From the IMG/VR virus record IMGVR_UViG_3300044712_001462, positions 1 to 64,000 of that record: a stretch of 64,000 nucleotides of DNA. The stretch is one strand, 5' to 3'. Positions within the stretch are counted from its first letter, which is position 1. Each line of letters begins with the position of its first letter. Below, one piece after another: positions 38,505-58,999 of the stretch. The notes under the pieces were generated by a model, which saw nothing but the letters and a program-made list of their open reading frames with translations, was not told where the DNA came from and made no database searches. A program made the position numbers and the translations under genes.

Positions 38505-38522
38505 CTCTCTGTTATCGCTATC
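38505..38522 (-). promoter_or_regulatory. conserved motif GATAGCGATAACAGAGAG (copy C)
   Basis: Identical to 26642-26659; 5 nt before the ATG at 38499. Confidence 0.5.
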
Positions 38523-38826
38523 AGAAGGTCATCTTCACCTTCTGCTTTTTACTGTTTACGAAATACAGGCGTACCTTCTCCGCATCCACCATCTTCTTGA
38601 ACTTCACCTTCTGGTCATTCGCCAGACTGCCGATGGCAACCTTGATACCGTTGTAGTCAAAACCGTTCTGGACTCGCTTCGCCGCACAGGGCTTACAGCG
38701 CGGTTTGCTTGTCTGTGGAGCGACCCGACTGGCCAGGTTGGACATGAATGGAAAGGCAGTTACCAGCTCCTGATTGCGAAGGAGCTGGGTAATGACGGAG
38801 TCTTCGAGGACAAGCAGTGGTGTCAT
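38521..38826 (-). CDS. hypothetical basic protein (CxxC)
   Basis: RCKPC; Lys-rich. Confidence 0.7.
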   Translation of the reverse strand: MTPLLVLEDSVITQLLRNQELVTAFPFMSNLASRVAPQTSKPRCKPCAAKRVQNGFDYNGIKVAIGSLANDQKVKFKKMVDAEKVRLYFVNSKKQKVKMTF

Positions 38827-38828
38827 GA

Positions 38829-39266
38829 TTAGCCCAACGAAGAGGAGGAAGAAGAATCTGTACCGGCAGAAAGGGTCACCGTCTCGTCAAGCACTAGGTT
38901 GTCTAGGGAGGACAACAGAGTGAGCAGGCGCTGGACTTGTGAGTTGATCTCAGCCTTGGTGTCTTCGAACATCCTAACGGTGGGCAGAAGAATATCGATC
39001 TCGGCTTTGCGGAAGTAGGCCGGGCTCTGGGTGGGATTCGGTTCGCCTGCGGGGTAGATCGATAGCTCGTAAGGGGAGCAGATAAAGCTGAACTCATCTT
39101 GCTGCGCGCCAGTAGCCGGATCTACCAACGTCTTCTGGTGTCCGAAGATCTCCGTAGGCATGTTCACCGCGTTTGAGGCTAAACATACCAGTCTGAAAAC
39201 TTCTCGACCTTGAAAAGCAATCGGCTCTGGAGATTGAAACGAGAGATCGATCGAATACAGGGCCAT
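38829..39266 (-). CDS. hypothetical protein, probably virion-associated, with Ser-rich C tail
   Basis: FSFICSP.EL..YP...P..YFR; DSSSSSSLG end. Confidence 0.7.
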   Translation of the reverse strand: MALYSIDLSFQSPEPIAFQGREVFRLVCLASNAVNMPTEIFGHQKTLVDPATGAQQDEFSFICSPYELSIYPAGEPNPTQSPAYFRKAEIDILLPTVRMFEDTKAEINSQVQRLLTLLSSLDNLVLDETVTLSAGTDSSSSSSLG

Positions 39267-39276
39267 GGTTTGTCTC

Positions 39277-40206
39277 TTACTGCCAGGGGAATTTCTCTTT
39301 ACGACCCCGCTTCAGACCTTGGCCTGCGGGAGGTGTAAATACGAGGTTTTTTGCGGAATTGAAGTCTTTGATCTTGTATCCATTTTGGTAAAGCTGTTCC
39401 CCAATCACAATGTCACCGCCTTTTTGCAGCAACCGACGATCCGGAATATCACACTGTCGAATGGCTTCCGCACTAACCACAAAGAACCAATCGGAGCAGA
39501 AGTGAATGGTATCTCCATTGGGAATCGGAGAGCCGTGCTTTGACCGGAAGTCTTTGCCTCTATACCAGCTTGACTGCTGAAACCAGCCACGGGGATCTTT
39601 TTCTTGGTGCAGTTTGAATGTGCGATAGCTTCGGGGGCCATAAGCGCCGACTTGCTGACTCTGCCTGTGAATGTCGTCCGCCAGAATATTGAGCCAGTTG
39701 AGGTGTTTGACCCAGGTGTTGTCGTCAAACCAGGCTACGTAATTGGTGGTGATTGGATGATCTGGGTCCCAGAACATCTGGCGCATCGCTGGGTATTTGA
39801 AGATGTTGCCCTCGTTAATGTAGAGGGCTGTTGGAGAGAGCGTGCGAACGTATTCGAGAACCTGTGTCGAGCAGGCGTTGCAAGTAATGCGGAGGTCTAA
39901 CTTGTCCGAAGGAATTGTCTTGAGAATTCCGTCTAGGCAGGCGCGCTGGGTCCAAAAGTAATCGCCGTAACACAGTACACAGACTGTTAACTTGCCCCCG
40001 AGTTCGAAGTAATCAAGGCCTGTACCGCAATTATCGGTGATATTGGGTGCTGGTTTAGGGTCTGACACACCAGGCTGCCAGGCTGTTGACGTATCCAGGA
40101 GTACCAAGTCCGTGAAGATGGGATCAGACCAGATCAACGGATGAGGCTGATGGGCGTCCGCGCGCAGTGGATACTTGTCGAGAGGGCGAATAATCGCGGA
40201 AGTCAT
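39277..40206 (-). CDS. GT-A fold glycosyltransferase (GT2-like)
   Basis: TVCVLCYG, N..KYPAMR, YVAWFDDN, GGDIVIG. Confidence 0.8.
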   Translation of the reverse strand: MTSAIIRPLDKYPLRADAHQPHPLIWSDPIFTDLVLLDTSTAWQPGVSDPKPAPNITDNCGTGLDYFELGGKLTVCVLCYGDYFWTQRACLDGILKTIPSDKLDLRITCNACSTQVLEYVRTLSPTALYINEGNIFKYPAMRQMFWDPDHPITTNYVAWFDDNTWVKHLNWLNILADDIHRQSQQVGAYGPRSYRTFKLHQEKDPRGWFQQSSWYRGKDFRSKHGSPIPNGDTIHFCSDWFFVVSAEAIRQCDIPDRRLLQKGGDIVIGEQLYQNGYKIKDFNSAKNLVFTPPAGQGLKRGRKEKFPWQ

Positions 40207-41282
40207 GATTTTGACCAGTGCTGGTCCCAGTTAATCGGGCAGCTGAATACGTTGTGAGGAGTTGCTGTTATTGCATTTCGGGCATACCAGTCGCGAACTT
40301 CCCACTGCGGGAGCCCGATCGGCGGTAAATAACCCTGCTCGTAGTACGACATAACGGCTTCGCACACCGTTGCTGGTGTGATCAGGTTCATGCAGGCCGG
40401 TAAAGGCTGAGACCCGGGCGGTTGAGGGGCCCGCTGATGACAGATCAGTTTGTCTTTAGGGTGCGGCATGACTTTATTGCGCCAACAGCCGCGGTCTTTA
40501 CAGCACTCTAGCAAGCCAATCGTGTGCAAATATCTGTGTGGCACACGAATCGGAGCCGCTTTGGTACCAAACTGCCCATCATTTGTGTAAGCTTCCCAAG
40601 CCCAGTGCTCTCGACCTCCAGCTATAACCACAACCGGCTTCTCAAACGCAGCACCCATGTGCATTGCACAGGTGATCGGGCAGATGATGCCTTCACAGTG
40701 ATAGATTTGCCACATCAGCTGTCGGATGTAGCCCCAACCCAGCAGACTCATGACTCGCTGCATAGGCGGGTGGACACTGTCGGGTTTAGCTGATCCAGAT
40801 TGTGCGAAGCGCAAGCCGTAGGACTGCAGCGTGTCGATCGTCTCTTGATACCAGCTGTAGCGCCAGTGTTTGACAGTGAAGTCGGTCTTTCCGCCTCCAA
40901 ACACTAACCAATAACGTCCGCGTATCGGAGAACACTCTTTTTCGACCGTCGAGAGGTGCAAATCCGTCTTCGACTGGAGGCAATCAACGTGAATCCCGGT
41001 TTGCGCCTCGAAATTACGGTGAAATTCCGTAATGAAGTGGTGTTTATCGCCTCGTTCCACCGTAGTCATGCCTTTTCGGTAGCACAACTTGATGGTTTCG
41101 GCTTCGCTGTCCTGCAGAGGAGTCAAATATGGGTTGCATTCGTAGATTGCTCGAAACGTGTTCCGAAAATCAACTGCATACCTGTCGCCATAGGTTAGTA
41201 CGATGTCCCGGACTAAGGCGGTTGTACAAGTCTCATCTCCCGGTGCGAGATGATGTGTCAGGATAAATTTGCGCTCGGGCAT
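40203..41282 (-). CDS. GT9-like (ADP-heptose:LPS heptosyltransferase family) glycosyltransferase
   Basis: APGD...TALVRD, NPYL, K.W....Q, T..MHMGAAFEKPVVVI, C...CW, CM..ITP..V. Confidence 0.85.
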   Translation of the reverse strand: MPERKFILTHHLAPGDETCTTALVRDIVLTYGDRYAVDFRNTFRAIYECNPYLTPLQDSEAETIKLCYRKGMTTVERGDKHHFITEFHRNFEAQTGIHVDCLQSKTDLHLSTVEKECSPIRGRYWLVFGGGKTDFTVKHWRYSWYQETIDTLQSYGLRFAQSGSAKPDSVHPPMQRVMSLLGWGYIRQLMWQIYHCEGIICPITCAMHMGAAFEKPVVVIAGGREHWAWEAYTNDGQFGTKAAPIRVPHRYLHTIGLLECCKDRGCWRNKVMPHPKDKLICHQRAPQPPGSQPLPACMNLITPATVCEAVMSYYEQGYLPPIGLPQWEVRDWYARNAITATPHNVFSCPINWDQHWSKS

Positions 41283-42016
41283 GTTTGCAGCGTTTGGATG
41301 TGATGACGAATTTCGGTCACGTAGTCATCAATCTTAGCCGGATGCAAAGAAATGCGGCCAGGTGAAACAGGTAACTGACCAATGCGCGCGTAACTGGCGT
41401 CACCTTTAGCCGACAAGTGATAACTTGGTGAGTGCCAGCGGTAGAAGTAGTAGGTTTTTTCGAGGCCTACCGGTTCTCTCACCACCTCCACACCGAGTCT
41501 GCGGATTTTGTGCTCCAGATCAATGTCCTGACCGGAGTTCATAACAGTAAAGCCGCTGACTTTTTCAAGTAACTGCCTGGTCCAAATGGCTTTTGAAGGC
41601 GCAGGGTAGACTCCGGTGTCTTCAAACTGCAAACCAGCGCCTGTTTTCATCCAAATTTCACGACTCTGCCAGATTTCAGACCTTGTCTGCCATAATTTGT
41701 TGAGCGAGTAGCGTAATCGCCAGGGAAAACTGATGTCATCATCGTCAAAGCGACAAATATAGTCGCCTTGGCACTGCGAAATCGCAAAATTGAGCTTCTC
41801 TCCGAGCGTTTGAAAGCGCTCAGCGCGGTTGATGACCCGAATTTTAGGGTGCTGGAGCTGAAAGACCTGCTCTGGGCAGTCGTTGACCAGAATCAGCTCA
41901 GTATTCGGGTGATTTTGGGCCAAAAACGACCCTACAGCGTGCTCAACCAGCCACAATGCGTGTGGATACCGGTTGTAAGTGGGCATCACGCATGAGACTA
42001 GATCACAGGAGGACAT
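41258..42016 (-). CDS. GT2 glycosyltransferase
   Basis: VSCVMPTYNR, ELILVND, LGEKLN, GDYICRFDDDD, GQD; start MSSCDL (track 42058). Confidence 0.9.
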   Translation of the reverse strand: MSSCDLVSCVMPTYNRYPHALWLVEHAVGSFLAQNHPNTELILVNDCPEQVFQLQHPKIRVINRAERFQTLGEKLNFAISQCQGDYICRFDDDDISFPWRLRYSLNKLWQTRSEIWQSREIWMKTGAGLQFEDTGVYPAPSKAIWTRQLLEKVSGFTVMNSGQDIDLEHKIRRLGVEVVREPVGLEKTYYFYRWHSPSYHLSAKGDASYARIGQLPVSPGRISLHPAKIDDYVTEIRHHIQTLQTCPSANLS

Positions 42017-42848
42017 ACTGAGATGATTTCTGGGGGGTTGAATGGATCCCGCACTCATCGAGGACGCGCTGATAGGCGTCGGCCGGTACTTTTTCTTTGA
42101 AATGCTCCAGTACCGGCTCTAGATCCAGTTTTAGTTCTTGCAGACCGATTAGGTAGTTGCGGAATTTGTCGACGGTTTGACAACGGTAAGGAATCCCAGC
42201 GGGTCGATTAAAGCGGTGCATCCATTTGAAATCAGGCAGACAGATGACTTGTCCGCCTTGTTGTCTGATCTTCTCGTGGATATACCCCTCTTCACCGCCG
42301 AATCCGCGGAAGCGCGGGTTGAATCCGGGCCAGGCAGCTTTGGTACAGGCCATGACACCGGTACCTTGCTGTGGAATCACCACTGGTTCCGTACTTAGCT
42401 CCTGCCTGGCCCACGTCCCCCACATTTCGCTGCGCCAGTTCGCATCCTGGTGTGTCGCTGAGACTTTGAAGTTGTCATCGATCAGTGGACCCTGGATCAG
42501 GTCCTTATCATTTCCACGGAAGTCCAAGTAATGGAGGAGGTACTGCAGGCTCCCAGGAGGAAAGAAGACGTGACAGTCCATGCAGAGCACATAGTCGGTG
42601 TCTGCGATGGTAAAGACCTGGTTTTTTACCGTGGTTCCTTGCCACTCGGTAAACGTCTCGTAGCGACCACCAATGCGTTTAAGAAAGGCAGCTGTGGCTT
42701 TGCCTGCTGCGCTCTCTGGCTGATTATCCACCACCAGAAGGTCAGATCGCTCAAGAATTTCCGGGTGATAGAGCCGGATGGCTTGGACGGAGAAATACAC
42801 TCCATCGTAGTCATCGTACACAGCCATACCGATTGTCAGTCGCTTCAT
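42003..42848 (-). CDS. GT2 glycosyltransferase
   Basis: LTIGMAVYDD, LVVDN, VLCMDCH, GFNPRFRGFGGEEGY. Confidence 0.9.
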   Translation of the reverse strand: MKRLTIGMAVYDDYDGVYFSVQAIRLYHPEILERSDLLVVDNQPESAAGKATAAFLKRIGGRYETFTEWQGTTVKNQVFTIADTDYVLCMDCHVFFPPGSLQYLLHYLDFRGNDKDLIQGPLIDDNFKVSATHQDANWRSEMWGTWARQELSTEPVVIPQQGTGVMACTKAAWPGFNPRFRGFGGEEGYIHEKIRQQGGQVICLPDFKWMHRFNRPAGIPYRCQTVDKFRNYLIGLQELKLDLEPVLEHFKEKVPADAYQRVLDECGIHSTPQKSSQYVLL

Positions 42849-42854
42849 ATTTGA

Positions 42855-44099
42855 TTACGGCGGAGGAGGCGGTATCTCCGTAGATGTACTAGCCGGACCA
42901 TCCGAAGTAGGTGCTGAAGTGGATGGCGATGAAGTAGGTTCTAGTGTTGAGGATGTTGGCGCTGGTGTTGTCGTTGTGGTTGTGGGCGCATCCGTTGTCG
43001 GCGGATAGGTTGTCGGCGGATAACTGGTCGGAGGCGTTGTTGTAGTCGGCGGACACGGGCATACAATCTCAACCTGACCGTAATAATCTCCAGTGATTCC
43101 CGGTGCCACACAGGCCGGATCGCTTCCAGCTACGGGCATCCAGGTTCCCGGTGGGCACCACACAAACCAGCAGCACTCTCCATCTGCGTAACTTTGGCAG
43201 AGATGGAAGGTGAAGACAATCTCAACGCTACATTCCCCGTAGGGCACGACTTCCACGTCGACGGTAGGTGTCGTACAGTCATAAGCCACAACCACAGTGG
43301 AGGAGACGGTTACGTCGGGTGTACAACCGTCGTCTCCTGGAGGTCCAGGAGGTCCTGGCGGTCCATCCAGTCCCGACATCGCGGCGAAAGCTGGAATGGG
43401 TACATCAATGGCAGGACAATCCGTTAGAGGCTCTGGCGCATCAGGTACATCGCAGTCGTTAATGATTGGGACGTCTTCGATGGGGCATACCGGAGCCATT
43501 GAGCAACGAGCTGGGGCAAAAACAGGTGTGAAGGGCTCCGCGCAGGGATCCAATGTTGTGGGTCCCTCGACTGAGACAAATTTACCCTCGAGGAAAGCCA
43601 CATTGATGGCATTCTCTGGGGACTGGAAACGGGTGACCTTGTTGCCGTCTTCGTCGACGAACCCTGTGATCTGCAGGACAATGCCACTGGATGACACTGT
43701 CTGGGGTAATGAGTTCTTGAAGTCGACAAAATCGCGATCCAGCCAAGGATCTCCGGTATCATTTGAAGTCTCCGTGTGCTTGAACCGGACTTCAAAGATT
43801 GCCTCGCCGACGTCAGCCACCTCGACGGTGAGCTTAAGATCCACTTCACCCAAAAAGACCCCATCGCGAATCTCTTCATTGAAATGGCGTAGGGATCCGA
43901 GAATAAACGTGGCACCGATCTCGACGTCGGTATTATCGATGCCGCGGAAGCCATAACCGCTGGCTGCGTTATTTGTGTTGTCAGGCTCACCCCAGTGAAT
44001 ACGCGCTTCCGTACCCAGTGTGCTGAGATACAGATTGGTGATGCCGGACGGCGTCCAGTCATTCCAGGCGGAGCGAATTTGGTTGATATGTACGGTCAT
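42855..44099 (-). CDS. fibre/adhesin: choice-of-anchor-K-like beta domain, short collagen (GPP) segment, Cys-rich region, mucin-like P/T/S tail
   Basis: WGEP...SGYGF...FILG.LRHFN..I...ETSN; GPPGPPGPPG; PTTYPPTT...STSTE. Confidence 0.7.
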   Translation of the reverse strand: MTVHINQIRSAWNDWTPSGITNLYLSTLGTEARIHWGEPDNTNNAASGYGFRGIDNTDVEIGATFILGSLRHFNEEIRDGVFLGEVDLKLTVEVADVGEAIFEVRFKHTETSNDTGDPWLDRDFVDFKNSLPQTVSSSGIVLQITGFVDEDGNKVTRFQSPENAINVAFLEGKFVSVEGPTTLDPCAEPFTPVFAPARCSMAPVCPIEDVPIINDCDVPDAPEPLTDCPAIDVPIPAFAAMSGLDGPPGPPGPPGDDGCTPDVTVSSTVVVAYDCTTPTVDVEVVPYGECSVEIVFTFHLCQSYADGECCWFVWCPPGTWMPVAGSDPACVAPGITGDYYGQVEIVCPCPPTTTTPPTSYPPTTYPPTTDAPTTTTTTPAPTSSTLEPTSSPSTSAPTSDGPASTSTEIPPPPP

Positions 44100-45145
44100 G
44101 GGGAGGTACCGCAGTCGCAGGGGTCTTCGGATTCAGCTGGCATGGGTGCAGGAGCACCGACGTCTCGGAATTGCGGACAGATGGCCATATTCTGTAGATC
44201 CGCGTTGATGATGACTTTGTGTTCATCGGGAACCGGTGTGATGACCACACCGTTGCCGCCTGTGATGTTAAAGAAGCGGGAACCAATGCCGTTCAGGCTG
44301 CGCACCACTTCACCGCAGCGCAGCGCTCCATCCAGAGCCGTACGGCCGTTGGGTGCCGCTTCCGCTGGGAACAGCAGAACGTCTTCACAGGGTTCGCCTT
44401 TTCCTGCTCCTACGTTCGCTTCAATCACAATTCGATTACCATCTGTCTCTTGACGAATGGAAATGTTGTACCCTTCCTCGAACTTCACATCTCCAACCAC
44501 ATATCCGTCCGCCACATAGTGCTCGTAAGCCGGGAATGACCAACAAAGGTCACGGCAGTCTTCTTTAGTTGTGGCGCGTGTGCGTTCCGCGTTAGCAAGA
44601 CTCAGGGAGTTTACAAAAGCATTGGAAGCGTTGGTGACTCGGGAGGGCTCAACTGTGGCCGTGTTCACCCAGTCGCCAGTGGCTAAGAACTCAGCGAGGC
44701 GGGACAGATCCCCGGAGACCATAAACCCATACCACAAGGGCATCGTGTAAGTATCGTCGAGAGGAGAGAAAGGAGGCCACAGTTCCGCTAGACTAACAAA
44801 GGGATTATCCCAAAGCTGCACAACAACGGAGTAACTGCTGGCGGCTTCTTCTGAGACGGAAGAGTTGGAATAGGAGGAGATGTAGTTACCGTCGTTGATG
44901 TCTCGTTGAAACAGTAAGCAGGTGCCTAAGGTGCCTGCGGCGTTCGAGCGGAATTCAAACTCAATCAGACTTCCGCTCAGACGCATCGCATAGAGATAGA
45001 CGGAATGCGTGGCATCCACGAATCCGGTTCCCGAGTTCACAACACAACCAAAATCCACGATTGCATAGTCGGGCAGATCAGACTGCGGTGTGTAGATGAA
45101 CGGATAGCTACGGTTCAGATTGTCGTTGAAGAAGCCAGGACGCAT
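44096..45145 (-). CDS. Cys-rich tail/baseplate fibre scaffold paralog 1
   Basis: N-terminal NDNLNRSYPF; C-terminal VRSLNG. Confidence 0.7.
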   Translation of the reverse strand: MRPGFFNDNLNRSYPFIYTPQSDLPDYAIVDFGCVVNSGTGFVDATHSVYLYAMRLSGSLIEFEFRSNAAGTLGTCLLFQRDINDGNYISSYSNSSVSEEAASSYSVVVQLWDNPFVSLAELWPPFSPLDDTYTMPLWYGFMVSGDLSRLAEFLATGDWVNTATVEPSRVTNASNAFVNSLSLANAERTRATTKEDCRDLCWSFPAYEHYVADGYVVGDVKFEEGYNISIRQETDGNRIVIEANVGAGKGEPCEDVLLFPAEAAPNGRTALDGALRCGEVVRSLNGIGSRFFNITGGNGVVITPVPDEHKVIINADLQNMAICPQFRDVGAPAPMPAESEDPCDCGTSP

Positions 45146-46686
45146 TACCGAATATCCTCAAGTTTTTCACCGACTGCTTCAATGATCAGACCCTCGCTAG
45201 AGGGGCGTACCCGCAAGATGGTATCAGGCACATCTTGGCTACCGACTGTGATGTTGATGTTGCCACGTTCCCCAGGGCCACAGCACAGAATCTGTGAGAG
45301 GACAGCCGGGGAGCCTTCTCCGCTGGTGACCACGGTGATCACAGAGTCTACAATTGCGGCGGCGACTTCAGCCGCTACTGCTGTATTCACGCTGTGGTAG
45401 ATTCCGCCATCAGTTTCTGTAGTGATGGTAGACGCCTGATAGCGGCCATCGGACGGAGCAGGGCCCGGAGCATCGAGACCCGCGCCAGCTGCCTTCTGGT
45501 TTAAGGCGAAGACTGCGATGTTCTGGTCGACGAGTTCATTGAGCGTGGCTTGAAAGGTGGGATAAGGTTGACCCTTTGCGCCATCTTCCCAGCCAGGGAC
45601 ATCCCCGGCCCAGAGAATTCCTCGCCCAGCTGTGCTACTACCGGTTAATGTATCCCAACCTGTCGCGATGTGCAGTAAAGCAGCGAGGTTCTGTTCTGAG
45701 GTATCTCCACCTCCACCTGCGGTTAGCGCGTTGATTGCAGAGAGGATGGAAGCGCTATCGCTGGTAAAAGGAAGGTGGAGCTTGTAGCCGTAGCTGGCGT
45801 AGTCTCCGCCGTCTTCATAATCTCGATATCCGGCTACCGCCCAACGAATTGTGGCGTCCGGTGCCGTGGCGGTTACAGTCGTCAGGATATCCGGCATAAC
45901 TGTCTTCAAAGTGGATAGAAAACCACTCATCGAGCCTGTGGTATCCACCAGGATCAAGATGTCGGCATTACCTTCACTGTAGACCTCAGATGTACCTGTC
46001 CCTTTGAGTTCGGGCGTGGTAAAGCAGATCCGCTCGATAAACTGAGAGGTTTGGAATTGGGCTGGTGAAGCGCATAGGGCTCGACGGAAAAGCGGATCGC
46101 CTACAGCGTCTACCCTTACAGCTGTAAAAGTGCGCTGAGCGGTTTCGCAGTATCCTCCCACGGTGACTTGGCTACTGGAGAGGACGATGCCACCATCTCC
46201 TACTAACCACACATCCCCTGAAACAACCGAGCCATCATCCAACAAAAGTCCTTGCACCCCGATCCCAGGCATAGGAATGCAGACGGAAGCCACGAAGGGA
46301 GTTTGGCTGGAGGAAAAGGTATGCGTCCCCACGCCCAGCGACTTGAGCTGAGTAAGCCTTACGGCTTCAGAAACCAGCAAACCCGCCGCTCGTCCGTAGG
46401 TATCCACTAAGCGCAACGAATCTGGGACAGCATTGGATTGAAACGAGGCGGAAGCCAGCTGGGTGTTTGTTTCGTCTCCCACGTAAACGGTAGTCGTCGT
46501 GTTGGTAATGACGAGCTTTGAGAGGTAATATTGTCCGGTTCCGCCGACAGGATAAAGCGCCGCGTCTAAGAATGTAGACGGATCGATCGTAATGCCTGCG
46601 GCGTTAGTGAGCAGGGCATCATCCTCAAACGGATAGTTGGTCGGGTCGTGACTGTCTCGCCACTCAGGATGCCGAATGTGTGTCAT
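45145..46686 (-). CDS. fibre scaffold paralog 2 with inserted vWA domain
   Basis: EWRD..TNYPF; DILILVDTTGSM MIDAS, YRDY, GGGDTSE, AGD. Confidence 0.8.
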   Translation of the reverse strand: MTHIRHPEWRDSHDPTNYPFEDDALLTNAAGITIDPSTFLDAALYPVGGTGQYYLSKLVITNTTTTVYVGDETNTQLASASFQSNAVPDSLRLVDTYGRAAGLLVSEAVRLTQLKSLGVGTHTFSSSQTPFVASVCIPMPGIGVQGLLLDDGSVVSGDVWLVGDGGIVLSSSQVTVGGYCETAQRTFTAVRVDAVGDPLFRRALCASPAQFQTSQFIERICFTTPELKGTGTSEVYSEGNADILILVDTTGSMSGFLSTLKTVMPDILTTVTATAPDATIRWAVAGYRDYEDGGDYASYGYKLHLPFTSDSASILSAINALTAGGGGDTSEQNLAALLHIATGWDTLTGSSTAGRGILWAGDVPGWEDGAKGQPYPTFQATLNELVDQNIAVFALNQKAAGAGLDAPGPAPSDGRYQASTITTETDGGIYHSVNTAVAAEVAAAIVDSVITVVTSGEGSPAVLSQILCCGPGERGNINITVGSQDVPDTILRVRPSSEGLIIEAVGEKLEDIR

Positions 46687-48287: not shown

Positions 48288-51200
48288 TTATTCACCCGTT
48301 TCACAGCAGCTGCCTGAATCCGATGAGACAATCAAACCCGAGGCCCACGAGATCGGAGTGGCTCCGCCTGGGTTCGCTCCGCCTGCTGCAGAAGCGGAGA
48401 CGGTTAAGGCCACGATGTCGGAGGCGGTACAGCCCGGAAGCTGCAGGACAAACGTAACATAGCCGTTTTCACCCTCGTTGATACAGTCGAATGATGCGGT
48501 GAAGAGGGGCCATTCACCACCCAGCTTGTACGGCATGAGTTGAGAAGGTGGAATGTTGCGATAGGGATCCACGTTTCCGCGTCGGTAAGTCGTGCCGCAG
48601 AGGACACAACCGGCAATCGTGGAAGCCGAGAAGTCCAGAGTCAGCTCCCCGTCGAGGAGTGGTTCCGTGGTTCCATTACACAGAGAAGCTGCCACCGCTA
48701 GACGACACGAACCAATGGGGAGCAGAGCCATCTGGAGTAGATTGGCTTGTCGGCAAGACTTCTGGGCATTCCAGCGGTCAATGTTCTCTTTGTACTGGTC
48801 GCGTACCGCTTCCGCGCGTCTCCCTAACTCAGCGTAACGATTACTGACACGGCGGATGGCTTCGTAAACGTTGACGAAGTCATCGCACTCGCAGCAGGGC
48901 CCGCAGTCATTCGAGATCTTGAGCGTGGCTTGGTTCAGCCGAATATTCCGAGTGCCACCCAGATAGGTGTACTCCAGAGGACCCAGCTCAGAGACGGCTT
49001 CTGGATCACTCTCGAGGATAGGCTGTTCAAGTCGGTAGCACTCCGCAGCATCCAGTCTCAGGTTACCGGCATCATCCGCGGTGACTCCGTTGATTCGGCG
49101 CAGCACTGGGACCGCATCACAGCCCGGATATTGTCCGAGTCCGGCTCCGGGTACTGCCTCCAATAAAACGTTGGTGACTCGCCGAGTGCCATCTACATCG
49201 GTCTGACTCTGGACATCCAGAATACTGTTGTAGCCTGCCTGCCAAACCACAGGAGAGCCTGCGGGGATAACAACGTCACCTGAGGTATCTACCAGCGCCG
49301 TGCCGACTCGCAGCTCCGTAACTTGAGAAACAACACGCTCATAAGTACGCGGATCGAGTCGAGCATCAAGCGGCTCGAAATACCGAGGCCAGTTTCTGGG
49401 TGTCTCGCCGATGGCCCAAGTGCGATACAACGTCAGGCGCAAGATCTCGTCGTCCGACGTCGTCCACTGCAGGATTAGTTTGGAGGCGGCCCAGGTGTTG
49501 ATGGAGAAATCAAATGCATCTCGAGAATCGAAGACGACTCGGTCCTGGGCATCCGTAATCGCCACATCATACCGATGTACCTCTCCAGTGGGATTCGTTG
49601 CGGCAAGCGTACCAAAACCTGAAAGCCAAGCAACTTTGAACGGCTGCTCGAGCTGGCAGTAATGATCCTGATAGCGCAAATAGAGATCCCCGATCAGGAT
49701 GTCCAGATCATCCGAGGGATCCACAAAGGGGAAGCGTGTTCCACCTTGGTTCTGATCGACCGCGACCTGCTGTCTGCCTACCTCGTCGAATACCGTGAGC
49801 GAAGAGGATGAGACATACGATTCACTGCTTACCAGTGAGCTGGAGAGAGAGCTCTCAGGGTACACGTAACTGGAAGAGGACGTCAGGCTGGAGTAGGAAC
49901 TAGTGAGGCTGCTACTGAACTCCGCGCCCAGGCTGGAGTAGCCGTTGCAGTTATCGAAGTAGAAGTAATCGTAGAACGTACCTGCTGTGGAGTTGAGGAC
50001 GCGAATACCAAACTTGGTAGCCGTAACGTTGTAGTCCGCAGTGAACGAGAGACTGGCTAGGGTGGTAGTACCATTCCAGATCGTGACGGTCGCCAGGTTA
50101 CCGTTGATCTGGATGACAGCTATTAGCCGAGTATCGAGAGGCAGGTACGGAGAGATAGCCGTGCTGGCAATCTCCGTGACGCCATCCTTGAGAATTTGAA
50201 TGCGGGCTTGGGTAATGTGCACATGGGTATAGGTGTTGTCATCCACCACCCGCAGTACAAAGCCAGCCGCTTTGACCAAGCTGGAGGTATGGAGCTGGAA
50301 AGCAGATGTCAGGGTCCCGTTACAGTATCCGGCGTCCACATACGCCATCGTCTCCGGCCAGAGCGAGCCAAAAGGCCGGACGACCATCTGACCAATAATG
50401 GAGAGGTAGGGTGCGGCATCGCCTTCCCAGACGATTCCGTCTCCGCCGAGATAGGTTATTCCGTTGGTAGACAAACCATCGGTATACCCCAGACCACTGG
50501 CTGACGACCGGGCAAAGCTGTCACCGATCCAGGGAATACACGTCGTAGGGGTCAGAGAGCTACTGGAACTGGTGAGACTACTGGTAGGTTCATCCGGAGT
50601 GTAGGAACTGCTCAGCGTGATCGAGCTAGAAGTGAGGTAGCTACAGGCAAAAAGCTCCACATCATCGATGTCGATCTGGGTGAAGGTACCTTCTAGTTCG
50701 ACGACCGCGGAGATCCGTCCGCGCACATACCCGGAAGCAGGGACGATGAAGCTGACTTCAAAGAGTCCTGTGGTGGACGTACTTGCGGAGGCCAGTAAGG
50801 AGCCATTACTAGCGTCATAGACTGCGGCGGTCAGCACTGCAGGCGATGACCAGTGTACAGCTTGAATCTGTACCGAGAGTGTTCCTGCCGTAGCCGGAAC
50901 TAATCCAGAGACCGACTGCTCCACGTACGCAGGATCCGCATACTCGGCATAGAGCCGGACTGTTTTGTCCGACAGAACTGTAGCCAGGTGATTACCCCAG
51001 CCCACAAAGTCATAGTCAAACGTGCTGTTGATAAACTGGTTGTAGCAATAGTACGGCGATTCAGAAGAGCTGATCACCGACTCGGAAGATGTATCGGAAC
51101 TACCGGCTAACCCACCAAACAAAAAGGCAAACACTTGTCTGGCTGTGGTATCTACCGAGGACCAAGTCAGTGCAATATTGGTCTCGTTGAGGGCTACTGT

Positions 51201-52346
51201 GGAAACTGCGGCCGCAGCATTGACTCGATCGGTATTTTTCCAGAGACGTAGCGCGTAGTTGCTATACTCACGGAAACCATTTTGCGGAGAAACACTGCTT
51301 TTATCGTCGGCCCACACAGCGGCCTGCACACCAGGAGCCGAGACCGCGCCAATCGCGATCTGAGCATGGGAGGTGGCGGATGTGGATGCTACCTTACCGG
51401 TACTCAGAAACAAAGCGGCTTGGGCGTTGACCGCTGAGGAGACTGTTTGGGTCTGTGCTGTTGTAGGCTGGGTGATGGAGAGAATATCTGTCTCCATTCC
51501 CTTTAAGCAGATGGCCCAGAAATAGGTGCTGGCCGCGGAGGTGAGCCCTGTGAAGTTCATCGTAAACCCGTCAGCATCAAACGATGTCAACGAGCCTTCA
51601 CCTACTGACGCTCCCGTGGTTGAGGAGAGATACTGTAGGAGCGTGGTGGAAAGTTGCTTCGACCAGCAGCTGGTGGTTGTTGGGACGTCGGCGTAGTTTT
51701 CAGACAGCGTCACCGAAGCCTGACTGGTGGCGTTCGCCATCCCAATACAGGCATAGGATCCACCAGTGACTGCGCTGGCTCCTCGGGCCCCGAATACCAA
51801 TACGGAGTCGGGCTGAAATCCACATCCAGTGAATGATTTGGAGCTATTGCTGGCGGGGACTCGGCACTGTCTGATACAGACGTTCTCAATATCACTCCCG
51901 CCCAGCGCCAGATAGTTAACCACCAGCGGAGAAGCGATCGATTCAACAACCCACCGCAAGGTAAAACCGGTGGACGAGAAGCTCTGCACCACACCTCCCG
52001 CAGGGTCTTCTGGAAATCCGGTCGCATTGCAGCGAAAGATGGTGACAGAGGTGTCGCGGTTGGCATAGGTCAGGGCTGTGGGGGTTGTACCGCCTTCCGT
52101 GCTGCCTGTAGATAGGTAAGCGGAATCAACGAGACCCTCGGTAACAATGTCCGGAATTCCCGGGGCAACGGCGGCACCAAATCCAAAGCCATATTCAGGG
52201 GCCGTAGCTCCGTCTTCGTCAGCCGTACCCCAAAAGAACAGAATCAGCTTGGGCTCAAAGCCTACTGAGATTGTCTGATCGAAGGTAGTTGGAACAGCCC
52301 CTGGGAGCGGGATGTTAATGGTGCCTGCGCGAGTCAGCAGAGCCAT
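48288..52346 (-). CDS. large tail fibre / receptor-binding protein (scaffold paralog 4)
   Basis: Repeated GF.P..V and S.GFT..W units, CBM-like NSTF...W...IDDVEL domain, lectin-like domain, Ser-rich linkers, RRINGVTADDAGN and NDCGPCCEC. Confidence 0.75.
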   Translation of the reverse strand: MALLTRAGTINIPLPGAVPTTFDQTISVGFEPKLILFFWGTADEDGATAPEYGFGFGAAVAPGIPDIVTEGLVDSAYLSTGSTEGGTTPTALTYANRDTSVTIFRCNATGFPEDPAGGVVQSFSSTGFTLRWVVESIASPLVVNYLALGGSDIENVCIRQCRVPASNSSKSFTGCGFQPDSVLVFGARGASAVTGGSYACIGMANATSQASVTLSENYADVPTTTSCWSKQLSTTLLQYLSSTTGASVGEGSLTSFDADGFTMNFTGLTSAASTYFWAICLKGMETDILSITQPTTAQTQTVSSAVNAQAALFLSTGKVASTSATSHAQIAIGAVSAPGVQAAVWADDKSSVSPQNGFREYSNYALRLWKNTDRVNAAAAVSTVALNETNIALTWSSVDTTARQVFAFLFGGLAGSSDTSSESVISSSESPYYCYNQFINSTFDYDFVGWGNHLATVLSDKTVRLYAEYADPAYVEQSVSGLVPATAGTLSVQIQAVHWSSPAVLTAAVYDASNGSLLASASTSTTGLFEVSFIVPASGYVRGRISAVVELEGTFTQIDIDDVELFACSYLTSSSITLSSSYTPDEPTSSLTSSSSSLTPTTCIPWIGDSFARSSASGLGYTDGLSTNGITYLGGDGIVWEGDAAPYLSIIGQMVVRPFGSLWPETMAYVDAGYCNGTLTSAFQLHTSSLVKAAGFVLRVVDDNTYTHVHITQARIQILKDGVTEIASTAISPYLPLDTRLIAVIQINGNLATVTIWNGTTTLASLSFTADYNVTATKFGIRVLNSTAGTFYDYFYFDNCNGYSSLGAEFSSSLTSSYSSLTSSSSYVYPESSLSSSLVSSESYVSSSSLTVFDEVGRQQVAVDQNQGGTRFPFVDPSDDLDILIGDLYLRYQDHYCQLEQPFKVAWLSGFGTLAATNPTGEVHRYDVAITDAQDRVVFDSRDAFDFSINTWAASKLILQWTTSDDEILRLTLYRTWAIGETPRNWPRYFEPLDARLDPRTYERVVSQVTELRVGTALVDTSGDVVIPAGSPVVWQAGYNSILDVQSQTDVDGTRRVTNVLLEAVPGAGLGQYPGCDAVPVLRRINGVTADDAGNLRLDAAECYRLEQPILESDPEAVSELGPLEYTYLGGTRNIRLNQATLKISNDCGPCCECDDFVNVYEAIRRVSNRYAELGRRAEAVRDQYKENIDRWNAQKSCRQANLLQMALLPIGSCRLAVAASLCNGTTEPLLDGELTLDFSASTIAGCVLCGTTYRRGNVDPYRNIPPSQLMPYKLGGEWPLFTASFDCINEGENGYVTFVLQLPGCTASDIVALTVSASAAGGANPGGATPISWASGLIVSSDSGSCCETGE

Positions 52347-57320: not shown

Positions 57321-57335
57321 TAATAGCGCTATCTC
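57321..57335 (-). promoter_or_regulatory. conserved motif GAGATAGCGCTATTA (copy D)
   Basis: 15 bp identical to 9520-9534. Confidence 0.5.
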
Positions 57336-58992
57336 AAACCACGTCCATCGAGTTCACCGTCCGGGCGGAAATCGCAATGTCATCCCGAGACAAAACAAAG
57401 GTGACGGTGCGCGATGACACCATGTCGTCTGGCAGATAAGGGATGGTCAGCACTTCCGTACTACGGAGATTCTCGACAGTGTTATCCGGCTTCCGGATCT
57501 GCCCAAACATATCAATCTTGCTGACCGCCACTCGACCACTCAGGAAGTTGTGAATTCGATCGGCCAGTTCCGAAGCATAGAGCCGACCGCAGAACCCCAG
57601 TGAGTTCACATGATCAACGAGATCGTCTTTGATGGCTTCCGGATCGGGCAGGGCTTCACCCGCATAGCCTTCCAGCGAGAAAGACAAGCTGACAAAGCAA
57701 GGAATAGCCGCTTTGATCAGTACATCTCCCGCGTAGTTGCGGTACTCGCGGGAGTTCACAAAGGACTGAATGTCGTCCAGCAGAGGCATATAGCGCACGG
57801 TGACGGAGTAATCTTGTGTTGCCCACAAAGCTAGGCTGGAAGCATCGGTCAGCGTATCCACGAAACGAATGATTGCAGTCTGGTAGCGGCTGTAGACACC
57901 CTCGATCGGATCCTCGATGTCCGGAGTCAGCTCATTCGCTAGGGGCGCTAAGTCCGCTCCGCGCACGTCGTAAGTAATCTCGAACCCACCCGTGATCTCA
58001 CTGAGTGAAGGCGGCTGGATCGCAGTAATGTCGTAAAACCCAGGGGCGTCATCTCGAGAGATGGAAAACTGCCAGGTTCCGACTCCGTCTGGAGTAACTG
58101 AAACCAGCGCTGCAGTTTTAGTGAGCGCAACCTGCTGCGGCAAAGCCTGAGTACGCAGATACCAATCCGCTCTGCCCCCGTAAGACACAGGGAAGAGGGA
58201 GTGCTGATCGCGGATCATCTCGGCATCCCCGTAACCGATGATTGAGGAAGCGACAATCCCCGAAAAAGCCGGTTCGTTCTGTAGTAGCGCCAGCATGTTC
58301 ACCCGGTTCGACAGGGCTTTGCAGGCGATACCCGTCTGAAGCCGAGACAGCATTTCCGCGTTTGTTTCAGTATCCGTGCCATCGGCGAAGTCGCTCGTCG
58401 CGTAGGCCTTCACAAAGTTGACGATGGCGGAGCTGGGAATCAGCAGCGTGTTCTTTGTCAGCTGCGAGGCGCTCCCGACTTCCGCGGCGGTCACGGTAAT
58501 CGTAAAGGCATACGTACCGTCACCCAGAGAGGTGAGTACTTTATCCGTTGCTGACTGGGTGCTTCCGGAGGTTGTTCGAGCGACATAGGAAGCATTCGAG
58601 CGGTATTCTTTACCGTTCGCGGTAAACACAGCGCCATTTTCAACCGTTGTTGTAGCGAGAGCCGAAACAACGATGGTAACGCTACCCGTGGCTTTCTGAC
58701 CGGTTTGCCTGGTGACTCGGTAATTCGAGAGGACAGCATCTACTACGTCATCGTCAGCCAGCGTGGGATCTGCTTCGATCTCTAGGAGACTACTGGAGCG
58801 GCGGAGCTTATCGATGTTCTCCTGAGTACCTGCAGCTAACAGCGAGCTGTAGTGCAGTAGCAAATCGTGGAGCACACCGCGCTTCAGGTCGAGGGCGGGA
58901 TTCGCCTCTTGCAGTAACTGAGCCAGTGTCTCGCGGATCTGCTCAACGCTGGTAGTCGAAAGTTCAGAGAGGCTACTGATCTCTAAAGCCAT
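57334..58992 (-). CDS. baseplate J-like wedge protein
   Basis: NP.LDL..G.L.DLL, RVTR.TG.KATG.V, GTDTETNAEM..R, GGRADWY. Confidence 0.85.
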   Translation of the reverse strand: MALEISSLSELSTTSVEQIRETLAQLLQEANPALDLKRGVLHDLLLHYSSLLAAGTQENIDKLRRSSSLLEIEADPTLADDDVVDAVLSNYRVTRQTGQKATGSVTIVVSALATTTVENGAVFTANGKEYRSNASYVARTTSGSTQSATDKVLTSLGDGTYAFTITVTAAEVGSASQLTKNTLLIPSSAIVNFVKAYATSDFADGTDTETNAEMLSRLQTGIACKALSNRVNMLALLQNEPAFSGIVASSIIGYGDAEMIRDQHSLFPVSYGGRADWYLRTQALPQQVALTKTAALVSVTPDGVGTWQFSISRDDAPGFYDITAIQPPSLSEITGGFEITYDVRGADLAPLANELTPDIEDPIEGVYSRYQTAIIRFVDTLTDASSLALWATQDYSVTVRYMPLLDDIQSFVNSREYRNYAGDVLIKAAIPCFVSLSFSLEGYAGEALPDPEAIKDDLVDHVNSLGFCGRLYASELADRIHNFLSGRVAVSKIDMFGQIRKPDNTVENLRSTEVLTIPYLPDDMVSSRTVTFVLSRDDIAISARTVNSMDVV

Positions 58993-58999
58993 AATCTTC

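What the first reader, a model, noticed from the sequence alone, without database searches (positions are those of the whole stretch)
39277..44099. Virion glycosylation cassette: four glycosyltransferases directly behind a mucin-like fibre
Three GT-A/GT2 genes and one GT9 (heptosyltransferase-like) gene follow, in the same operon, a fibre ending in a ~65-aa Pro/Thr/Ser tail (PPTTYPPTT...). Ser-rich tracts also occur in 48288-52346, 44096-45145, 53334-55145 and 38829-39266. Phage-encoded virion glycosylation is established for some actinophages. A GT9 plus dedicated mucin-like acceptor tracts in a myovirus tail suggests an O-glycan, possibly heptose-containing and LPS-mimicking, that shields or stiffens fibres (inference). 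No nucleotide-modification genes are adjacent, which argues against DNA as the acceptor.
Basis: partly seen in the sequence, partly recalled or inferred. Interest (0 to 1): 0.65.

Follow-up and report, generated by a model that had tools for sequence, protein, structure and literature searches.

The report
Tail-fibre glycosylation cassette in jumbo phage
An uncultured 225-kb soil and sludge phage carries four sugar-transferring enzymes inside its tail-fibre operon, right after a fibre-like protein with a mucin-like tail; two of them form a unit conserved across a whole clade of large phages, so the fibres are probably sugar-coated, but nobody has measured this.

Summary
On the minus strand, 39277-44099 encodes a 414-aa protein ending in a 65-aa tail that is 80% Pro/Thr/Ser. 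Four soluble glycosyltransferases follow: GT-A 281 aa, GT2 266 aa, GT9 359 aa and a GT-A of 309 aa that Pfam misses. Gaps are 10 nt or less, or the genes overlap.

New findings:
- The window is the first 64 kb of a 224.5-kb IMG/VR jumbo phage with a contractile-tail baseplate and no cultured relative.
- GT9 plus GT-A309 is the conserved core. Relatives were found in 158 IMG/VR contigs. The two are fused into one protein in 44 of 63 dereplicated loci.
- The core always sits between a hypervariable fibre slot and two small conserved genes.
- GT-A281 and GT2_266 are accessory genes.
- Ser/Thr/Pro tracts, up to about 400 residues of poly-Ser, are enriched on the fibre side.
- More than 500 bacterial homologues of this GT9 subfamily exist, mostly in Planctomycetota and Verrucomicrobiota. 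They lie next to Ser/Thr-rich proteins more often than chance, and sometimes next to genes with the domains of ADP-heptose synthesis.
- The subfamily has an invariant four-Cys insert that recalls TibC's iron finger.

Virion fibre O-glycosylation is the best reading (about 0.5). Host envelope remodelling is the main rival. The PT tail cannot be the only acceptor. "LPS mimicry" has no support.

The parts
42855..44099 (-). 414-aa protein in the hypervariable fibre slot. It has an N-terminal choice-of-anchor K domain, a Cys/Pro-rich region, PPGPPGPPG, a Cys-rich beta region and a 65-aa P/T/S tail.
   Evidence: NF038131, 82.6 bits against a cut-off of 30. Only two relatives were found by word search: one at 74% identity that keeps the tail, and one at 30% identity without a long tail. 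No TM segment.
42858..43052 (-). Mucin-like C-terminal tail, residues 350-414. Candidate O-glycan acceptor.
   Evidence: 80% P/T/S. Top S/T/P window in the whole genome.
43596..44069 (-). Choice-of-anchor K domain, residues 11-168.
42003..42848 (-). Accessory GT-A glycosyltransferase, 281 aa, with DxH and W-x-H metal-site motifs.
   Evidence: PF00535 24.5 bits. Sub-threshold Glyco_transf_7C hit. Profile A3 best matches the PDB entry TarP, 5e-7. Homologues occur only in L001, L002, L028/29 and L037.
41258..42058 (-). Accessory GT2 glycosyltransferase, 266 aa. The real start is probably Met15 at 42016. DxD motif within DDDD.
   Evidence: PF00535 4e-15. Weak hits to WcaA and EpsE. The L002 and L028 homologues start at the equivalent of Met15.
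40203..41282 (-). Core GT9-fold glycosyltransferase, 359 aa. Invariant Asp16 and an invariant four-Cys insert.
   Evidence: PF01075 28.2 bits. Profile hit to WaaF, 2.6e-7. VIA Z: 23.2 to 3tov, 20.8 to WaaF, 20.6 to TibC, 19-19.6 to WaaC. 22 of 26 strain differences fall at third codon positions.
40392..40505 (-). Cys-rich insert in the C-lobe of the GT9 enzyme, residues 260-297. Probable metal knuckle.
   Evidence: C260, C266, C281 and C297 are invariant in 46 phage sequences and in 35 of 35 sequences in the alignment of bacterial homologues plus the window's protein.
39277..40206 (-). Core GT-A glycosyltransferase, 309 aa, previously unassigned. It is fused to the GT9 domain in most relatives.
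   Evidence: AF2 pLDDT 84 and Foldseek GT-A hits. Fusion proteins P0045 and P0048 align to it at 42% and 37% identity.
38829..39266 (-). Conserved 145-aa protein that follows the core pair across the clade. It ends in a poly-Ser run.
   Evidence: Found within 4 genes downstream in 49 of 63 loci. 21% of unique homologues carry an S/T tract of at least 9 in 12 residues, at varying positions. No family or Atlas hit.
38521..38826 (-). Conserved 101-aa protein downstream of the 145-aa gene.
44096..45145 (-). Conserved 349-aa fibre-module protein. It marks the upstream edge of the hypervariable slot.
   Evidence: Fused to the VWA protein in L002.
45145..46686 (-). 513-aa protein with a VWA-like domain, conserved in the module.
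   Evidence: Sub-threshold VWA_4 and VWA_2 hits. Synteny.
48288..52346 (-). 1352-aa fibre-like protein with three Ser-rich interdomain linkers, near residues 415-430, 571-601 and 803-850.
57334..59467 (-). Baseplate J-like and gp25-like baseplate genes. They anchor the operon as a contractile-tail module.

Best explanation
The cassette is a phage-encoded cytoplasmic protein-glycosylation module that decorates tail-fibre proteins as they are made.

Core. The GT9-fold enzyme (40203-41282) and the GT-A enzyme (39277-40206) work as one bifunctional unit. The GT9 enzyme probably uses host ADP-heptose and attaches the first sugar to Ser/Thr hydroxyls of fibre proteins, as TibC and Aah do on autotransporters. 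The GT-A enzyme adds the next sugar.

Accessory pair. In this phage GT-A281 and GT2_266 extend the glycan or start a second one on the Thr/Pro-rich tail of the 414-aa protein just upstream.

Likely effect. Dense O-glycans would keep the low-complexity linkers and tails extended and protect them from proteases.

Shown: the enzyme folds, conserved catalytic-type motifs, gene order, the fusion, tract enrichment, and purifying selection.

Inferred: the acceptor, the donor sugars, the order of action, and the benefit.
For: 1. Position. The genes are packed without gaps inside the baseplate and fibre operon.

2. Conservation. IMG/VR has 158 relatives. In 63 dereplicated loci the order is p531, VWA, p349, a variable slot, GT9/GT-A309, p145, p101. 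The pair is fused in 44 loci and split in 7.

3. Variable genes next to the core. One relative carries an epimerase/dehydratase, a methyltransferase and a DUF5672 protein directly upstream. Glycan-tailoring genes next to hypervariable fibre genes suggest a diversifying surface glycan.

4. Tract enrichment in phages. ORFs with at least 20 of 30 S/T/P residues number 27 of 415 on the fibre side and 3 of 623 downstream (Fisher p = 1e-8). Some tracts are extreme: about 400 aa of poly-Ser in L019, and long tracts in L063, L077 and L028. In this genome the two richest tracts flank the cassette.

5. Independent bacterial evidence. In 59 bacterial loci with this GT9 subfamily, ORFs with at least 20 of 30 S/T residues lie within two genes of the GT9 gene in 15 of 210 cases, against 2 of 355 farther away (odds ratio 13.6, p = 1.6e-5). 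Nearly all are co-oriented with it.

6. Donor. Co-oriented bacterial neighbours include PfkB (5) and CTP_transf_like (6), the HldE domains. The phage has neither, so it would use the host's pool.

7. Enzyme features. All four lack TM segments. The GT9 enzyme has an invariant Asp16 and a four-Cys insert. TibC, a GT9-fold protein O-heptosyltransferase, matches as well as the LPS enzymes (Z 20.6) and has a four-Cys iron finger inserted in its C-lobe (PMC4358343).

8. Selection. 22 of 26 differences between strains in the GT9 gene are at third codon positions (p = 1e-7).

9. Precedent. Mycobacteriophage capsid and tail-tube C-termini are glycosylated by phage enzymes (Freeman 2023, as cited in PMC12619734).
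Against: - There is no direct evidence of glycosylated virion proteins and no expression data. No RNA run was found.
- Long S/T tracts are sporadic: 21% of p145 homologues, 15% of p531 homologues, and absent from many loci. The core pair is found throughout the clade, so its conserved acceptor is unidentified.
- L002 keeps both accessory enzymes and the core GT9 gene before the contig ends, yet it has no long tail on the homologous protein.
- The best sequence-profile match of the GT9 enzyme is WaaF, an LPS enzyme.
- ADP-heptose genes beside the bacterial homologues fit LPS synthesis equally well.
- The enrichment tests count related loci as independent and rest on my own crude ORF calls.
- Fibre proteins of many phages have low-complexity linkers without any glycosylation.
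Confidence: 0.5

Rival explanations
1. Host envelope remodelling. The GT9 enzyme and its partners add heptose and further sugars to the host's LPS core or another surface glycan during infection. This would mask the receptor, so that progeny virions are not lost on debris and rival phages cannot adsorb.
For: - Characterised GT9 enzymes are mostly LPS-core heptosyltransferases, and the best profile hit in the PDB is WaaF.
- A study of huge phages in wastewater annotates a phage heptosyltransferase as an LPS auxiliary gene (PMC10747093).
- The closest solved relative of GT-A281 by sequence profile is TarP. From my own knowledge, TarP is a prophage-encoded enzyme that glycosylates host wall teichoic acid.
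- LPS heptosyltransferases also lack TM segments.
- ADP-heptose synthesis domains beside the bacterial homologues fit LPS synthesis.
Against: - The genes sit at a fixed position, overlapping their neighbours, inside the fibre operon across the clade.
- The neighbours tallied around the bacterial homologues showed no Kdo-transferase or lipid A genes. They showed Ser-rich giant proteins, methyltransferases and zinc-ribbon proteins instead.
- The subfamily has a four-Cys insert. No WaaC or WaaF alignment covers it: profile hits end at position 223 and VIA alignments end near residue 320.
- The accessory gene set changes together with the hypervariable fibre slot.
Confidence: 0.25
2. The enzymes glycosylate a non-virion target or make a free or carrier-bound oligosaccharide. 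Examples are a host cytoplasmic protein, or a glycan that the fibres then bind. Their place in the fibre operon would then reflect only the timing of expression.
For: - The conserved acceptor of the core pair is not identified.
- Many loci have the pair without any obvious S/T tract.
- The bacterial homologues sit in very diverse contexts: kinases with WD40 repeats, RHS-repeat proteins, RDD proteins.
Against: - No flippase, polymerase or lipid-carrier genes were seen in the cassette.
- Proximity to Ser/Thr-rich proteins is non-random in both phages and bacteria.
Confidence: 0.15
3. DNA is the acceptor. The enzymes would hypermodify hydroxymethylated bases, as in T-even phages and the newly described systems.
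For: Phage GT-A and GT-B enzymes do glycosylate DNA (bioRxiv 10.1101/2023.12.21.572611).
Against: - Those systems sit beside thymidylate-synthase-like, TET/JBP or C5-methyltransferase genes and replication genes. None of these families was found in the 224.5-kb genome (the TET control found no match in any control genome, so that absence is weak).
- The cassette lies in the tail module.
- The GT9 fold is not among the DNA glycosyltransferases described there.
Confidence: 0.03
4. The proteins have lost their enzyme activity and now act as fibre chaperones or structural virion parts.
For: One fused relative, P0048, has F-E-S in place of the F-D-D motif.
Against: In this phage and most relatives the catalytic-type motifs are invariant: Asp16, GGK, GGRE, DxD and DxH. 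The GT9 gene is under purifying selection.
Confidence: 0.05

Closest known systems
Mycobacteriophage virion glycosylation (Che8 and others; Freeman et al. 2023, as cited in PMC12619734)
   Same: The glycosyltransferases are phage-encoded and lie with the structural genes. The acceptors are C-terminal extensions of virion proteins. Glycosylation would occur in the cytoplasm before assembly.
   Different: - The host there is an actinobacterium and the acceptors are capsid and tail-tube subunits.
- Here the candidates are fibre-slot proteins of an uncultured jumbo phage with a contractile tail.
- The conserved core here is a GT9-fold enzyme joined to a GT-A enzyme.
- Nothing has been measured here.
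- The original paper was not available to me.
Bacterial autotransporter heptosyltransferases TibC and Aah (PMC4358343)
   Same: - GT9-type GT-B fold (VIA Z 20.6, 274 residues aligned).
- Soluble and cytoplasmic.
- They attach heptose from ADP-heptose to Ser residues of a surface protein encoded next door.
- Four invariant Cys lie in an insert in the C-lobe, before the last helix.
   Different: - The phage enzyme has no N-terminal beta-barrel. The alignment starts at TibC residue 93.
- No sequence-level match was found.
- The Cys spacing differs and the metal is unknown.
- The candidate acceptors are low-complexity tracts and fibre proteins, not an autotransporter beta-helix.
- The enzyme is partnered with, or fused to, a GT-A domain.
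LPS core heptosyltransferases WaaC and WaaF (GT9)
   Same: Same fold and Pfam family. The best profile hit is WaaF, 2.6e-7, and VIA Z is 19-21.
   Different: - Identity is only 15-18%.
- The phage enzyme carries an extra four-Cys insert.
- Its gene lies in a tail-fibre operon rather than an LPS core cluster.
- The bacterial members of the subfamily lie beside Ser-rich proteins.
Serine-rich repeat adhesin glycosylation (GtfA/GtfB) and mucin-type O-glycosylation (GT27 ppGalNAc-T)
   Same: Dedicated soluble glycosyltransferases densely decorate long Ser/Thr tracts of a surface protein. GT-A281 has a DxH metal motif, and GT27 enzymes are among the fold matches of GT-A309.
   Different: No membership is shown. 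GT27 matches are no better than other GT-A families, and there is no lectin domain and no GtfA/B-type GT4. The comparison rests on my own knowledge of these systems.
Giant-virus capsid glycosylation (PBCV-1)
   Same: The virus encodes a multi-enzyme glycosylation machinery for its own structural proteins. This genome carries at least seven glycosyltransferase genes, two methyltransferases and an RmlD-like gene.
   Different: PBCV-1 has a eukaryotic host, N-linked atypical glycans and unrelated enzymes. The comparison is from my own knowledge; mentions the PBCV-1 capsid glycosyltransferase only as a fold match.

Membership tests
GT9 (Pfam PF01075, CAZy GT9 fold) | Sequence score above the family's gathering threshold | tested here: met
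   28.2 bits against a cut-off of 22. 29 bits in the six-frame search. Relatives score 41-47 bits.
GT9 (Pfam PF01075, CAZy GT9 fold) | GT-B fold with two Rossmann lobes, closest to solved GT9 structures | tested here: met
   VIA Z is 23.2, 20.8, 20.6 and 19-19.6 to 3tov, WaaF, TibC and WaaC. The next non-GT9 enzyme family scores 10.8.
GT9 (Pfam PF01075, CAZy GT9 fold) | Catalytic Asp at the start of the N-lobe | tested here: inconclusive
   Asp16, in the motif A-P-G-D after strand 1, is invariant in 46 phage sequences and in 35 of 35 sequences of the bacterial alignment. I could not make a residue-level superposition on WaaC Asp13 or TibC Asp110.
GT9 (Pfam PF01075, CAZy GT9 fold) | ADP-heptose as donor | not testable with these tools
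   Only context is available. PfkB and CTP_transf_like neighbours occur in 5-6 of 115 co-oriented neighbours of bacterial homologues. The phage has neither domain.
BAHT family (TibC/Aah protein O-heptosyltransferases) | [quoted passage not shown] | tested here: not met
   The model starts directly with the Rossmann strand at residue 4. The alignment to TibC begins at TibC residue 93.
BAHT family (TibC/Aah protein O-heptosyltransferases) | Four-Cys iron finger inserted in the C-lobe | tested here: inconclusive
   Four invariant Cys (260, 266, 281, 297) lie in an irregular insert before the last helices. TibC uses Cys339, 342, 358 and 370. Neither homology of the insert nor metal binding is shown.
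BAHT family (TibC/Aah protein O-heptosyltransferases) | Acceptor is a neighbouring autotransporter passenger domain | tested here: not met
   No autotransporter is present. The neighbours are phage fibre-module proteins.
GT2 (PF00535), 266-aa protein | Score above the gathering threshold and a DxD motif | tested here: met
   56.5 bits against 23.3. A D-D-D-D run follows the second strand region.
GT2 (PF00535), 281-aa protein | Score above the gathering threshold and a metal-binding motif | tested here: met
   24.5 bits against 23.3, which is borderline. D91-x-H93 and W209-x-H211 are invariant in 5 homologues.
GT27 polypeptide GalNAc-transferases | GT-A domain plus Gal/GalNAc-T motif plus ricin-type lectin domain | tested here: not met
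   Glyco_transf_7C scores 16.9 bits against a cut-off of 23. GalNAc-T4 gives only E 0.073. There is no lectin domain.
GT-A fold, 309-aa protein | Single Rossmann-like alpha/beta/alpha fold with a DxD motif | tested here: met
   Foldseek probability 1.0 to many GT-A enzymes, TM about 0.45-0.5. Asp161 is invariant and Asp162 nearly so. It reaches no Pfam threshold itself. One homologue has a precomputed PF00535 hit.
Choice-of-anchor K proteins (NF038131) | N-terminal domain above the cut-off | tested here: met
   82.6 bits against 30, residues 11-168.
Choice-of-anchor K proteins (NF038131) | C-terminal sorting signal such as PEP-CTERM | tested here: not met
   The protein ends in a P/T/S tail and P-P-P-P-P, with no hydrophobic segment (maximum KD19 of 1.0).
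Phage virion glycosylation systems (mycobacteriophage type) | Glycosyltransferase genes located with the structural genes | tested here: met
Phage virion glycosylation systems (mycobacteriophage type) | Glycans demonstrated on virion proteins | not testable with these tools
   No isolate exists and no proteomic data are available.

The most novel reading that the evidence does not exclude
This GT9 subfamily is marked by the invariant four-Cys insert. It is usually joined to a second GT-A domain, and it occurs in a large clade of jumbo phages and in hundreds of Planctomycetota, Verrucomicrobiota, Acidobacteriota and Eremiobacterota. It would be a new, widespread family of cytoplasmic protein Ser/Thr O-heptosyltransferases that build glycans on poly-Ser/Thr tracts. 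The tail fibres of a whole phage clade would then be heptosylated, making this the first virion glycosylation system outside actinophages and the first to use heptose.
Probability: 0.3. Interest if true: 0.8.

Novelty: new variant of a known kind. Interest (0 to 1): 0.6.

Why it matters
Virion glycosylation by phage enzymes has been shown only in a few mycobacteriophages.

If this module glycosylates tail fibres, the trait would extend to a large uncultured clade of jumbo phages found in soil, sludge and groundwater. It would also bring in a different enzyme type, a GT9-fold enzyme joined to a GT-A enzyme.

Three consequences would follow:
- Phage 'heptosyltransferases' now annotated as LPS auxiliary genes would need re-reading.
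- Hundreds of unexplained bacterial GT9 genes that sit next to poly-Ser proteins would gain a testable function.
- A small set of soluble enzymes would become available for putting sugars on Ser/Thr tracts.

The first test is simple, because E. coli already makes ADP-heptose.

Tried and rejected
- PHROG scans of all cassette and fibre proteins found nothing except for the baseplate genes.
- blastn and tblastn against 50,697 GenBank phages found nothing for the region, baseplate J, GT9 or GT-A309.
- phmmer of GT9 and GT-A309 against PDB sequences found nothing useful. Profile A1 against the PDB also found nothing.
- TibC was not reached by sequence profile even at E 10.
- The ESM Atlas had no hit for the 145-aa protein.
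Physical binding of the split pair was therefore not tested.
- Model coordinates are not exposed, so I could not measure Cys-Cys distances in the GT9 model.
- I took a 514-aa neighbour in some bacterial loci for HldE. In L100 it is a Methyltransf_24 protein. In L104 it is homologous to the C-terminal extension of the long GT9 fusions, which in L104 includes a Mannosyl_trans3 domain. I did not identify which neighbours carry the PfkB and cytidylyltransferase domains.
- A post hoc test linking GT-A281 to Thr-rich tracts was not significant at my first threshold (p = 0.14). Collagen-like G-P-T repeats and a truncated contig confuse it. I report it only as a hint.
- The Freeman 2023 paper is not in the library.
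- Whether the phage belongs to the 'moraphages', which have four core glycosyltransferase groups and a sigma factor (PMC12619734), could not be tested without their sequences.
- No alternative genetic code was needed.

Full report
**What is there.** The window is the first 64 kb of a 224,528-bp IMG/VR virus record that CheckV rates as complete. From about 63 kb down to 38 kb the minus strand carries one densely packed run of genes. It includes:
- a baseplate J-like gene (57334-58992; PF04865 4e-8, phrog_6 3e-16) and a gp25-like baseplate gene (59000-59467);
- several large proteins with no family match: 603, 318, 1352 and 531 aa;
- a protein with a weak VWA domain (513 aa) and a 349-aa protein;
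- then the region of the finding.

A sheath-like match lies at 71.5 kb (29 bits, just under the cut-off). A contractile tail is therefore likely but inferred. There are no tRNA genes in the window.

**The observation.** It is confirmed.
- The 414-aa product of 42855-44099 ends in 65 residues with 22 Thr, 20 Pro and 10 Ser. This is the richest S/T/P window among 287 ORFs I called in the whole genome. The second richest lies in the 1352-aa neighbour.
- The next four genes follow with gaps of 10 nt or less, or overlap. No minus-strand promoter-like site lies between them, and terminator-like sites are no more frequent than in shuffled sequence.
- The 266-aa protein is a clear GT2 (PF00535, 56.5 bits).
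- The 281-aa protein is a borderline GT2 (24.5 bits against 23.3) with an invariant D-x-H and a later W-x-H.
- The 359-aa protein passes the GT9 threshold (28.2 against 22). Its AF2 model (pLDDT 94.5) aligns to every solved GT9 structure at Z 19-23, and the next enzyme family scores 10.8.
- The 309-aa protein has no family hit. Its model (pLDDT 84, built on 20 homologues) is a GT-A fold with a conserved W-F-D-D.
- None of the four has a hydrophobic segment.

**The upstream protein.** It is not a recognisable phage fibre by sequence.
- Residues 11-168 are a choice-of-anchor K domain (NF038131, 82.6 bits against 30). This is a bacterial surface-protein module, here without any C-terminal sorting signal.
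- A Cys/Pro-rich stretch, P-P-G-P-P-G-P-P-G and a Cys-rich region follow, and then the tail.
- It sits in what comparison shows to be the hypervariable slot of the fibre module. Proteins in that slot in relatives often carry collagen-like G-P-T repeats.
- 'Fibre or fibre-tip protein' is therefore a reasonable inference.

**Relatives and anatomy of the module.**
- The 414-aa protein has only two detectable relatives. One is 74% identical and keeps the P/T/S tail (L001). The other is 30% identical (L002, 693 aa). It has a Cys-rich extension instead of a long tail, yet it is still followed by homologues of GT-A281, GT2_266 and GT9 in the same order.
- The GT9 protein has 219 or more relatives by word search. 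A scan of IMG/VR confirmed 158 relatives, and the 80 loci fetched include many from contigs of 150-260 kb.
- In 63 dereplicated loci the order is p1352-like, p531, VWA, p349, one to four variable genes, GT9/GT-A309, sometimes a small gene, p145, p101.
- GT9 and GT-A309 are one polypeptide in 44 loci and adjacent genes in 7. In 12 loci the second domain is too divergent for my search. Fusion proteins align to the 309-aa protein at 37-42% identity.
- The core is therefore a bifunctional GT9 plus GT-A unit. The two GT2-type genes of this phage occur only in a few lineages: this window, L001, L002, L028/29 and L037.
- Another relative has instead an epimerase/dehydratase, a methyltransferase and a DUF5672 protein at that spot.
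- GenBank phages have no match to GT9, GT-A309 or baseplate J. The lineage has no cultured member in that collection.
- The DNA occurs in rhizosphere (the probable source), activated-sludge and groundwater metagenomes.
- A sludge strain differs from the window at 44 of 2088 bases across GT9 and GT2_266. Of the 26 listed differences inside GT9, 22 are at third codon positions (p = 1e-7). The gene is under purifying selection.

**Ser/Thr/Pro tracts.**
- In the relatives, extreme tracts are common in slot proteins and also occur in p145, p531 and p349 homologues. Examples are a 399-residue poly-Ser tract in L019, about 200 residues in L063, 316 residues in L077, and a 105-residue S/T tract in L028 just upstream of GT-A281 and GT2_266 homologues.
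- ORFs of at least 100 aa with at least 20 of 30 S/T/P residues number 27 of 415 on the fibre side of GT9 and 3 of 623 downstream (p = 1e-8).
- The tracts are sporadic, however: 21% of unique p145 homologues, 15% of p531 homologues, and none in many loci. They cannot be the only acceptor of a core pair found throughout the clade.
- Thr-rich, mucin-like tracts, as opposed to poly-Ser, occur in the lineages that have GT-A281: this window and L001, L028/29, and L037. This is a post hoc observation on few lineages, and L002 is an exception.

**Bacterial homologues.**
Most are in Planctomycetota and Verrucomicrobiota, with some in Eremiobacterota, Acidobacteriota and Armatimonadota. Several lie on megabase contigs.
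- Three hits (L088-L090, binned with Aquaspirillum and Alcaligenaceae MAGs) are phage-type loci.
- In the bacterial loci the contexts are cellular: Ser/Thr kinase with WD40 repeats, RHS-repeat giant proteins, RDD and zinc-ribbon proteins. The GT9 domain is often fused to Methyltransf_24 or Mannosyl_trans3-type domains.
- Of 59 loci with a labelled GT9 gene, 15 hold an ORF with at least 20 of 30 S/T residues. Such ORFs lie within two genes of GT9 in 15 of 210 cases, against 2 of 355 farther away (odds ratio 13.6, p = 1.6e-5). Nearly all are on the same strand.
- Among 115 co-oriented neighbours the commonest families are Methyltransf_24 (7), CTP_transf_like (6), PfkB (5) and further GT9 (5). 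PfkB plus cytidylyltransferase are the domains of HldE, which makes ADP-heptose. This supports heptose as the donor but fits LPS synthesis equally well.
- The four Cys at positions 260, 266, 281 and 297 of the phage enzyme, and Asp16, are invariant in all 35 aligned sequences: 34 bacterial homologues plus the window's protein.

**Comparison with known systems.**
- TibC is a GT9-fold enzyme that puts heptose on Ser residues of an autotransporter. It has a four-Cys iron finger inserted in its C-lobe, which is needed for assembly and substrate recognition (PMC4358343).
- The phage enzyme matches TibC as well as it matches the LPS enzymes (Z 20.6 over 274 residues). That alignment reaches furthest into the C-terminal part.
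- It lacks TibC's N-terminal barrel and shows no sequence-level match. It is therefore not a BAHT member, although it may work like one.
- Phage virion glycosylation has been shown for mycobacteriophages (cited in PMC12619734). I found no paper that links a heptosyltransferase to phage fibres. One study of huge phages calls such a gene an LPS auxiliary gene.

**Weighing.**
- In favour of fibre glycosylation: fixed position inside the fibre operon, the fusion, co-variation of accessory sugar genes with the hypervariable slot, tract enrichment in phages, and the independent association in bacteria.
- Against: there is no measurement, the conserved acceptor is unknown, the statistics ignore relatedness and use crude ORF calls, and host LPS or surface remodelling remains a sound alternative.
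- DNA is an unlikely acceptor. The genome lacks thymidylate-synthase-like, TET/JBP and C5-methyltransferase genes, and the known DNA systems sit beside such genes.
- My estimates: virion protein glycosylation 0.5, host envelope remodelling 0.25, another target 0.15, and the rest small.

**Limits.**
- The host is unknown.

Noticed in passing
Outside the window: G000 159867-164272 (L086:5867-10272) and 138910-139887 (L087:4910-5887): A second sugar cluster lies here: methyltransferase, GT2, GT4, methyltransferase, an unknown gene, and a GT4-like gene. It is flanked by an SbcD-like exonuclease and ATPase/helicase genes. An RmlD-like reductase lies 20 kb away. The phage therefore encodes at least seven glycosyltransferases in two separate clusters. 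The target of this second cluster is unknown.
   Followed up: partly
window 59964-60728 (-): A sigma-70-like factor gene (Sigma70_r3, phrog_351) sits inside the baseplate module, between structural genes.
   Followed up: no
window 45145-46686 (-) and L002:246-3242: A protein with a VWA-like domain is a conserved member of the fibre module. In L002 it is fused with the 349-aa protein into one 998-aa product.
   Followed up: partly
L019:4277-6280, L063:7023-7883, L077:909-2354: Relatives encode fibre-slot proteins with poly-Ser tracts of about 200-400 residues. These are among the longest I have seen in phage ORFs. They are on the operon strand, but I did not check them for assembly or frame artefacts.
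   Followed up: partly
L004:16531-17112: A relative (JGI contig, 74 kb) encodes a protein with PCRF and RF-1 release-factor domains a few kb downstream of the module. The window itself reads cleanly in the standard code.
   Followed up: no
L100, L107, L117 (Planctomycetota MAGs): In L100 and L107 the bacterial GT9 homologue sits next to an RHS-repeat protein of 2,100-2,200 aa with a long poly-Ser region. L117 has a 2,258-aa Ser-rich neighbour that I did not scan for domains. These may be orthologous loci. They could be natural enzyme-substrate pairs.
   Followed up: partly
window 41258-42058 (-): The longest ORF of the GT2 gene overlaps the upstream gene by 56 nt. Homologues start at the equivalent of Met15, so the true start is probably 42016, leaving a 14-nt overlap.
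   Followed up: partly
Protein P0048 (Logan contig of SRR25572339, no DNA held): In this fused GT9-GT-A relative the F-D-D motif of the GT-A domain reads F-E-S. The locus has gained an epimerase/dehydratase, a methyltransferase and a 946-aa DUF5672 protein. This may be a change of donor or a loss of the second activity.
   Followed up: no
window 43326-43373 and 42978-43021: Short contigs from other metagenomes match only the collagen-like P-P-G and the P/T-coding repeats, at 80-90% likeness. These stretches attract unrelated low-complexity sequence and should not be read as strain variants.
   Followed up: no
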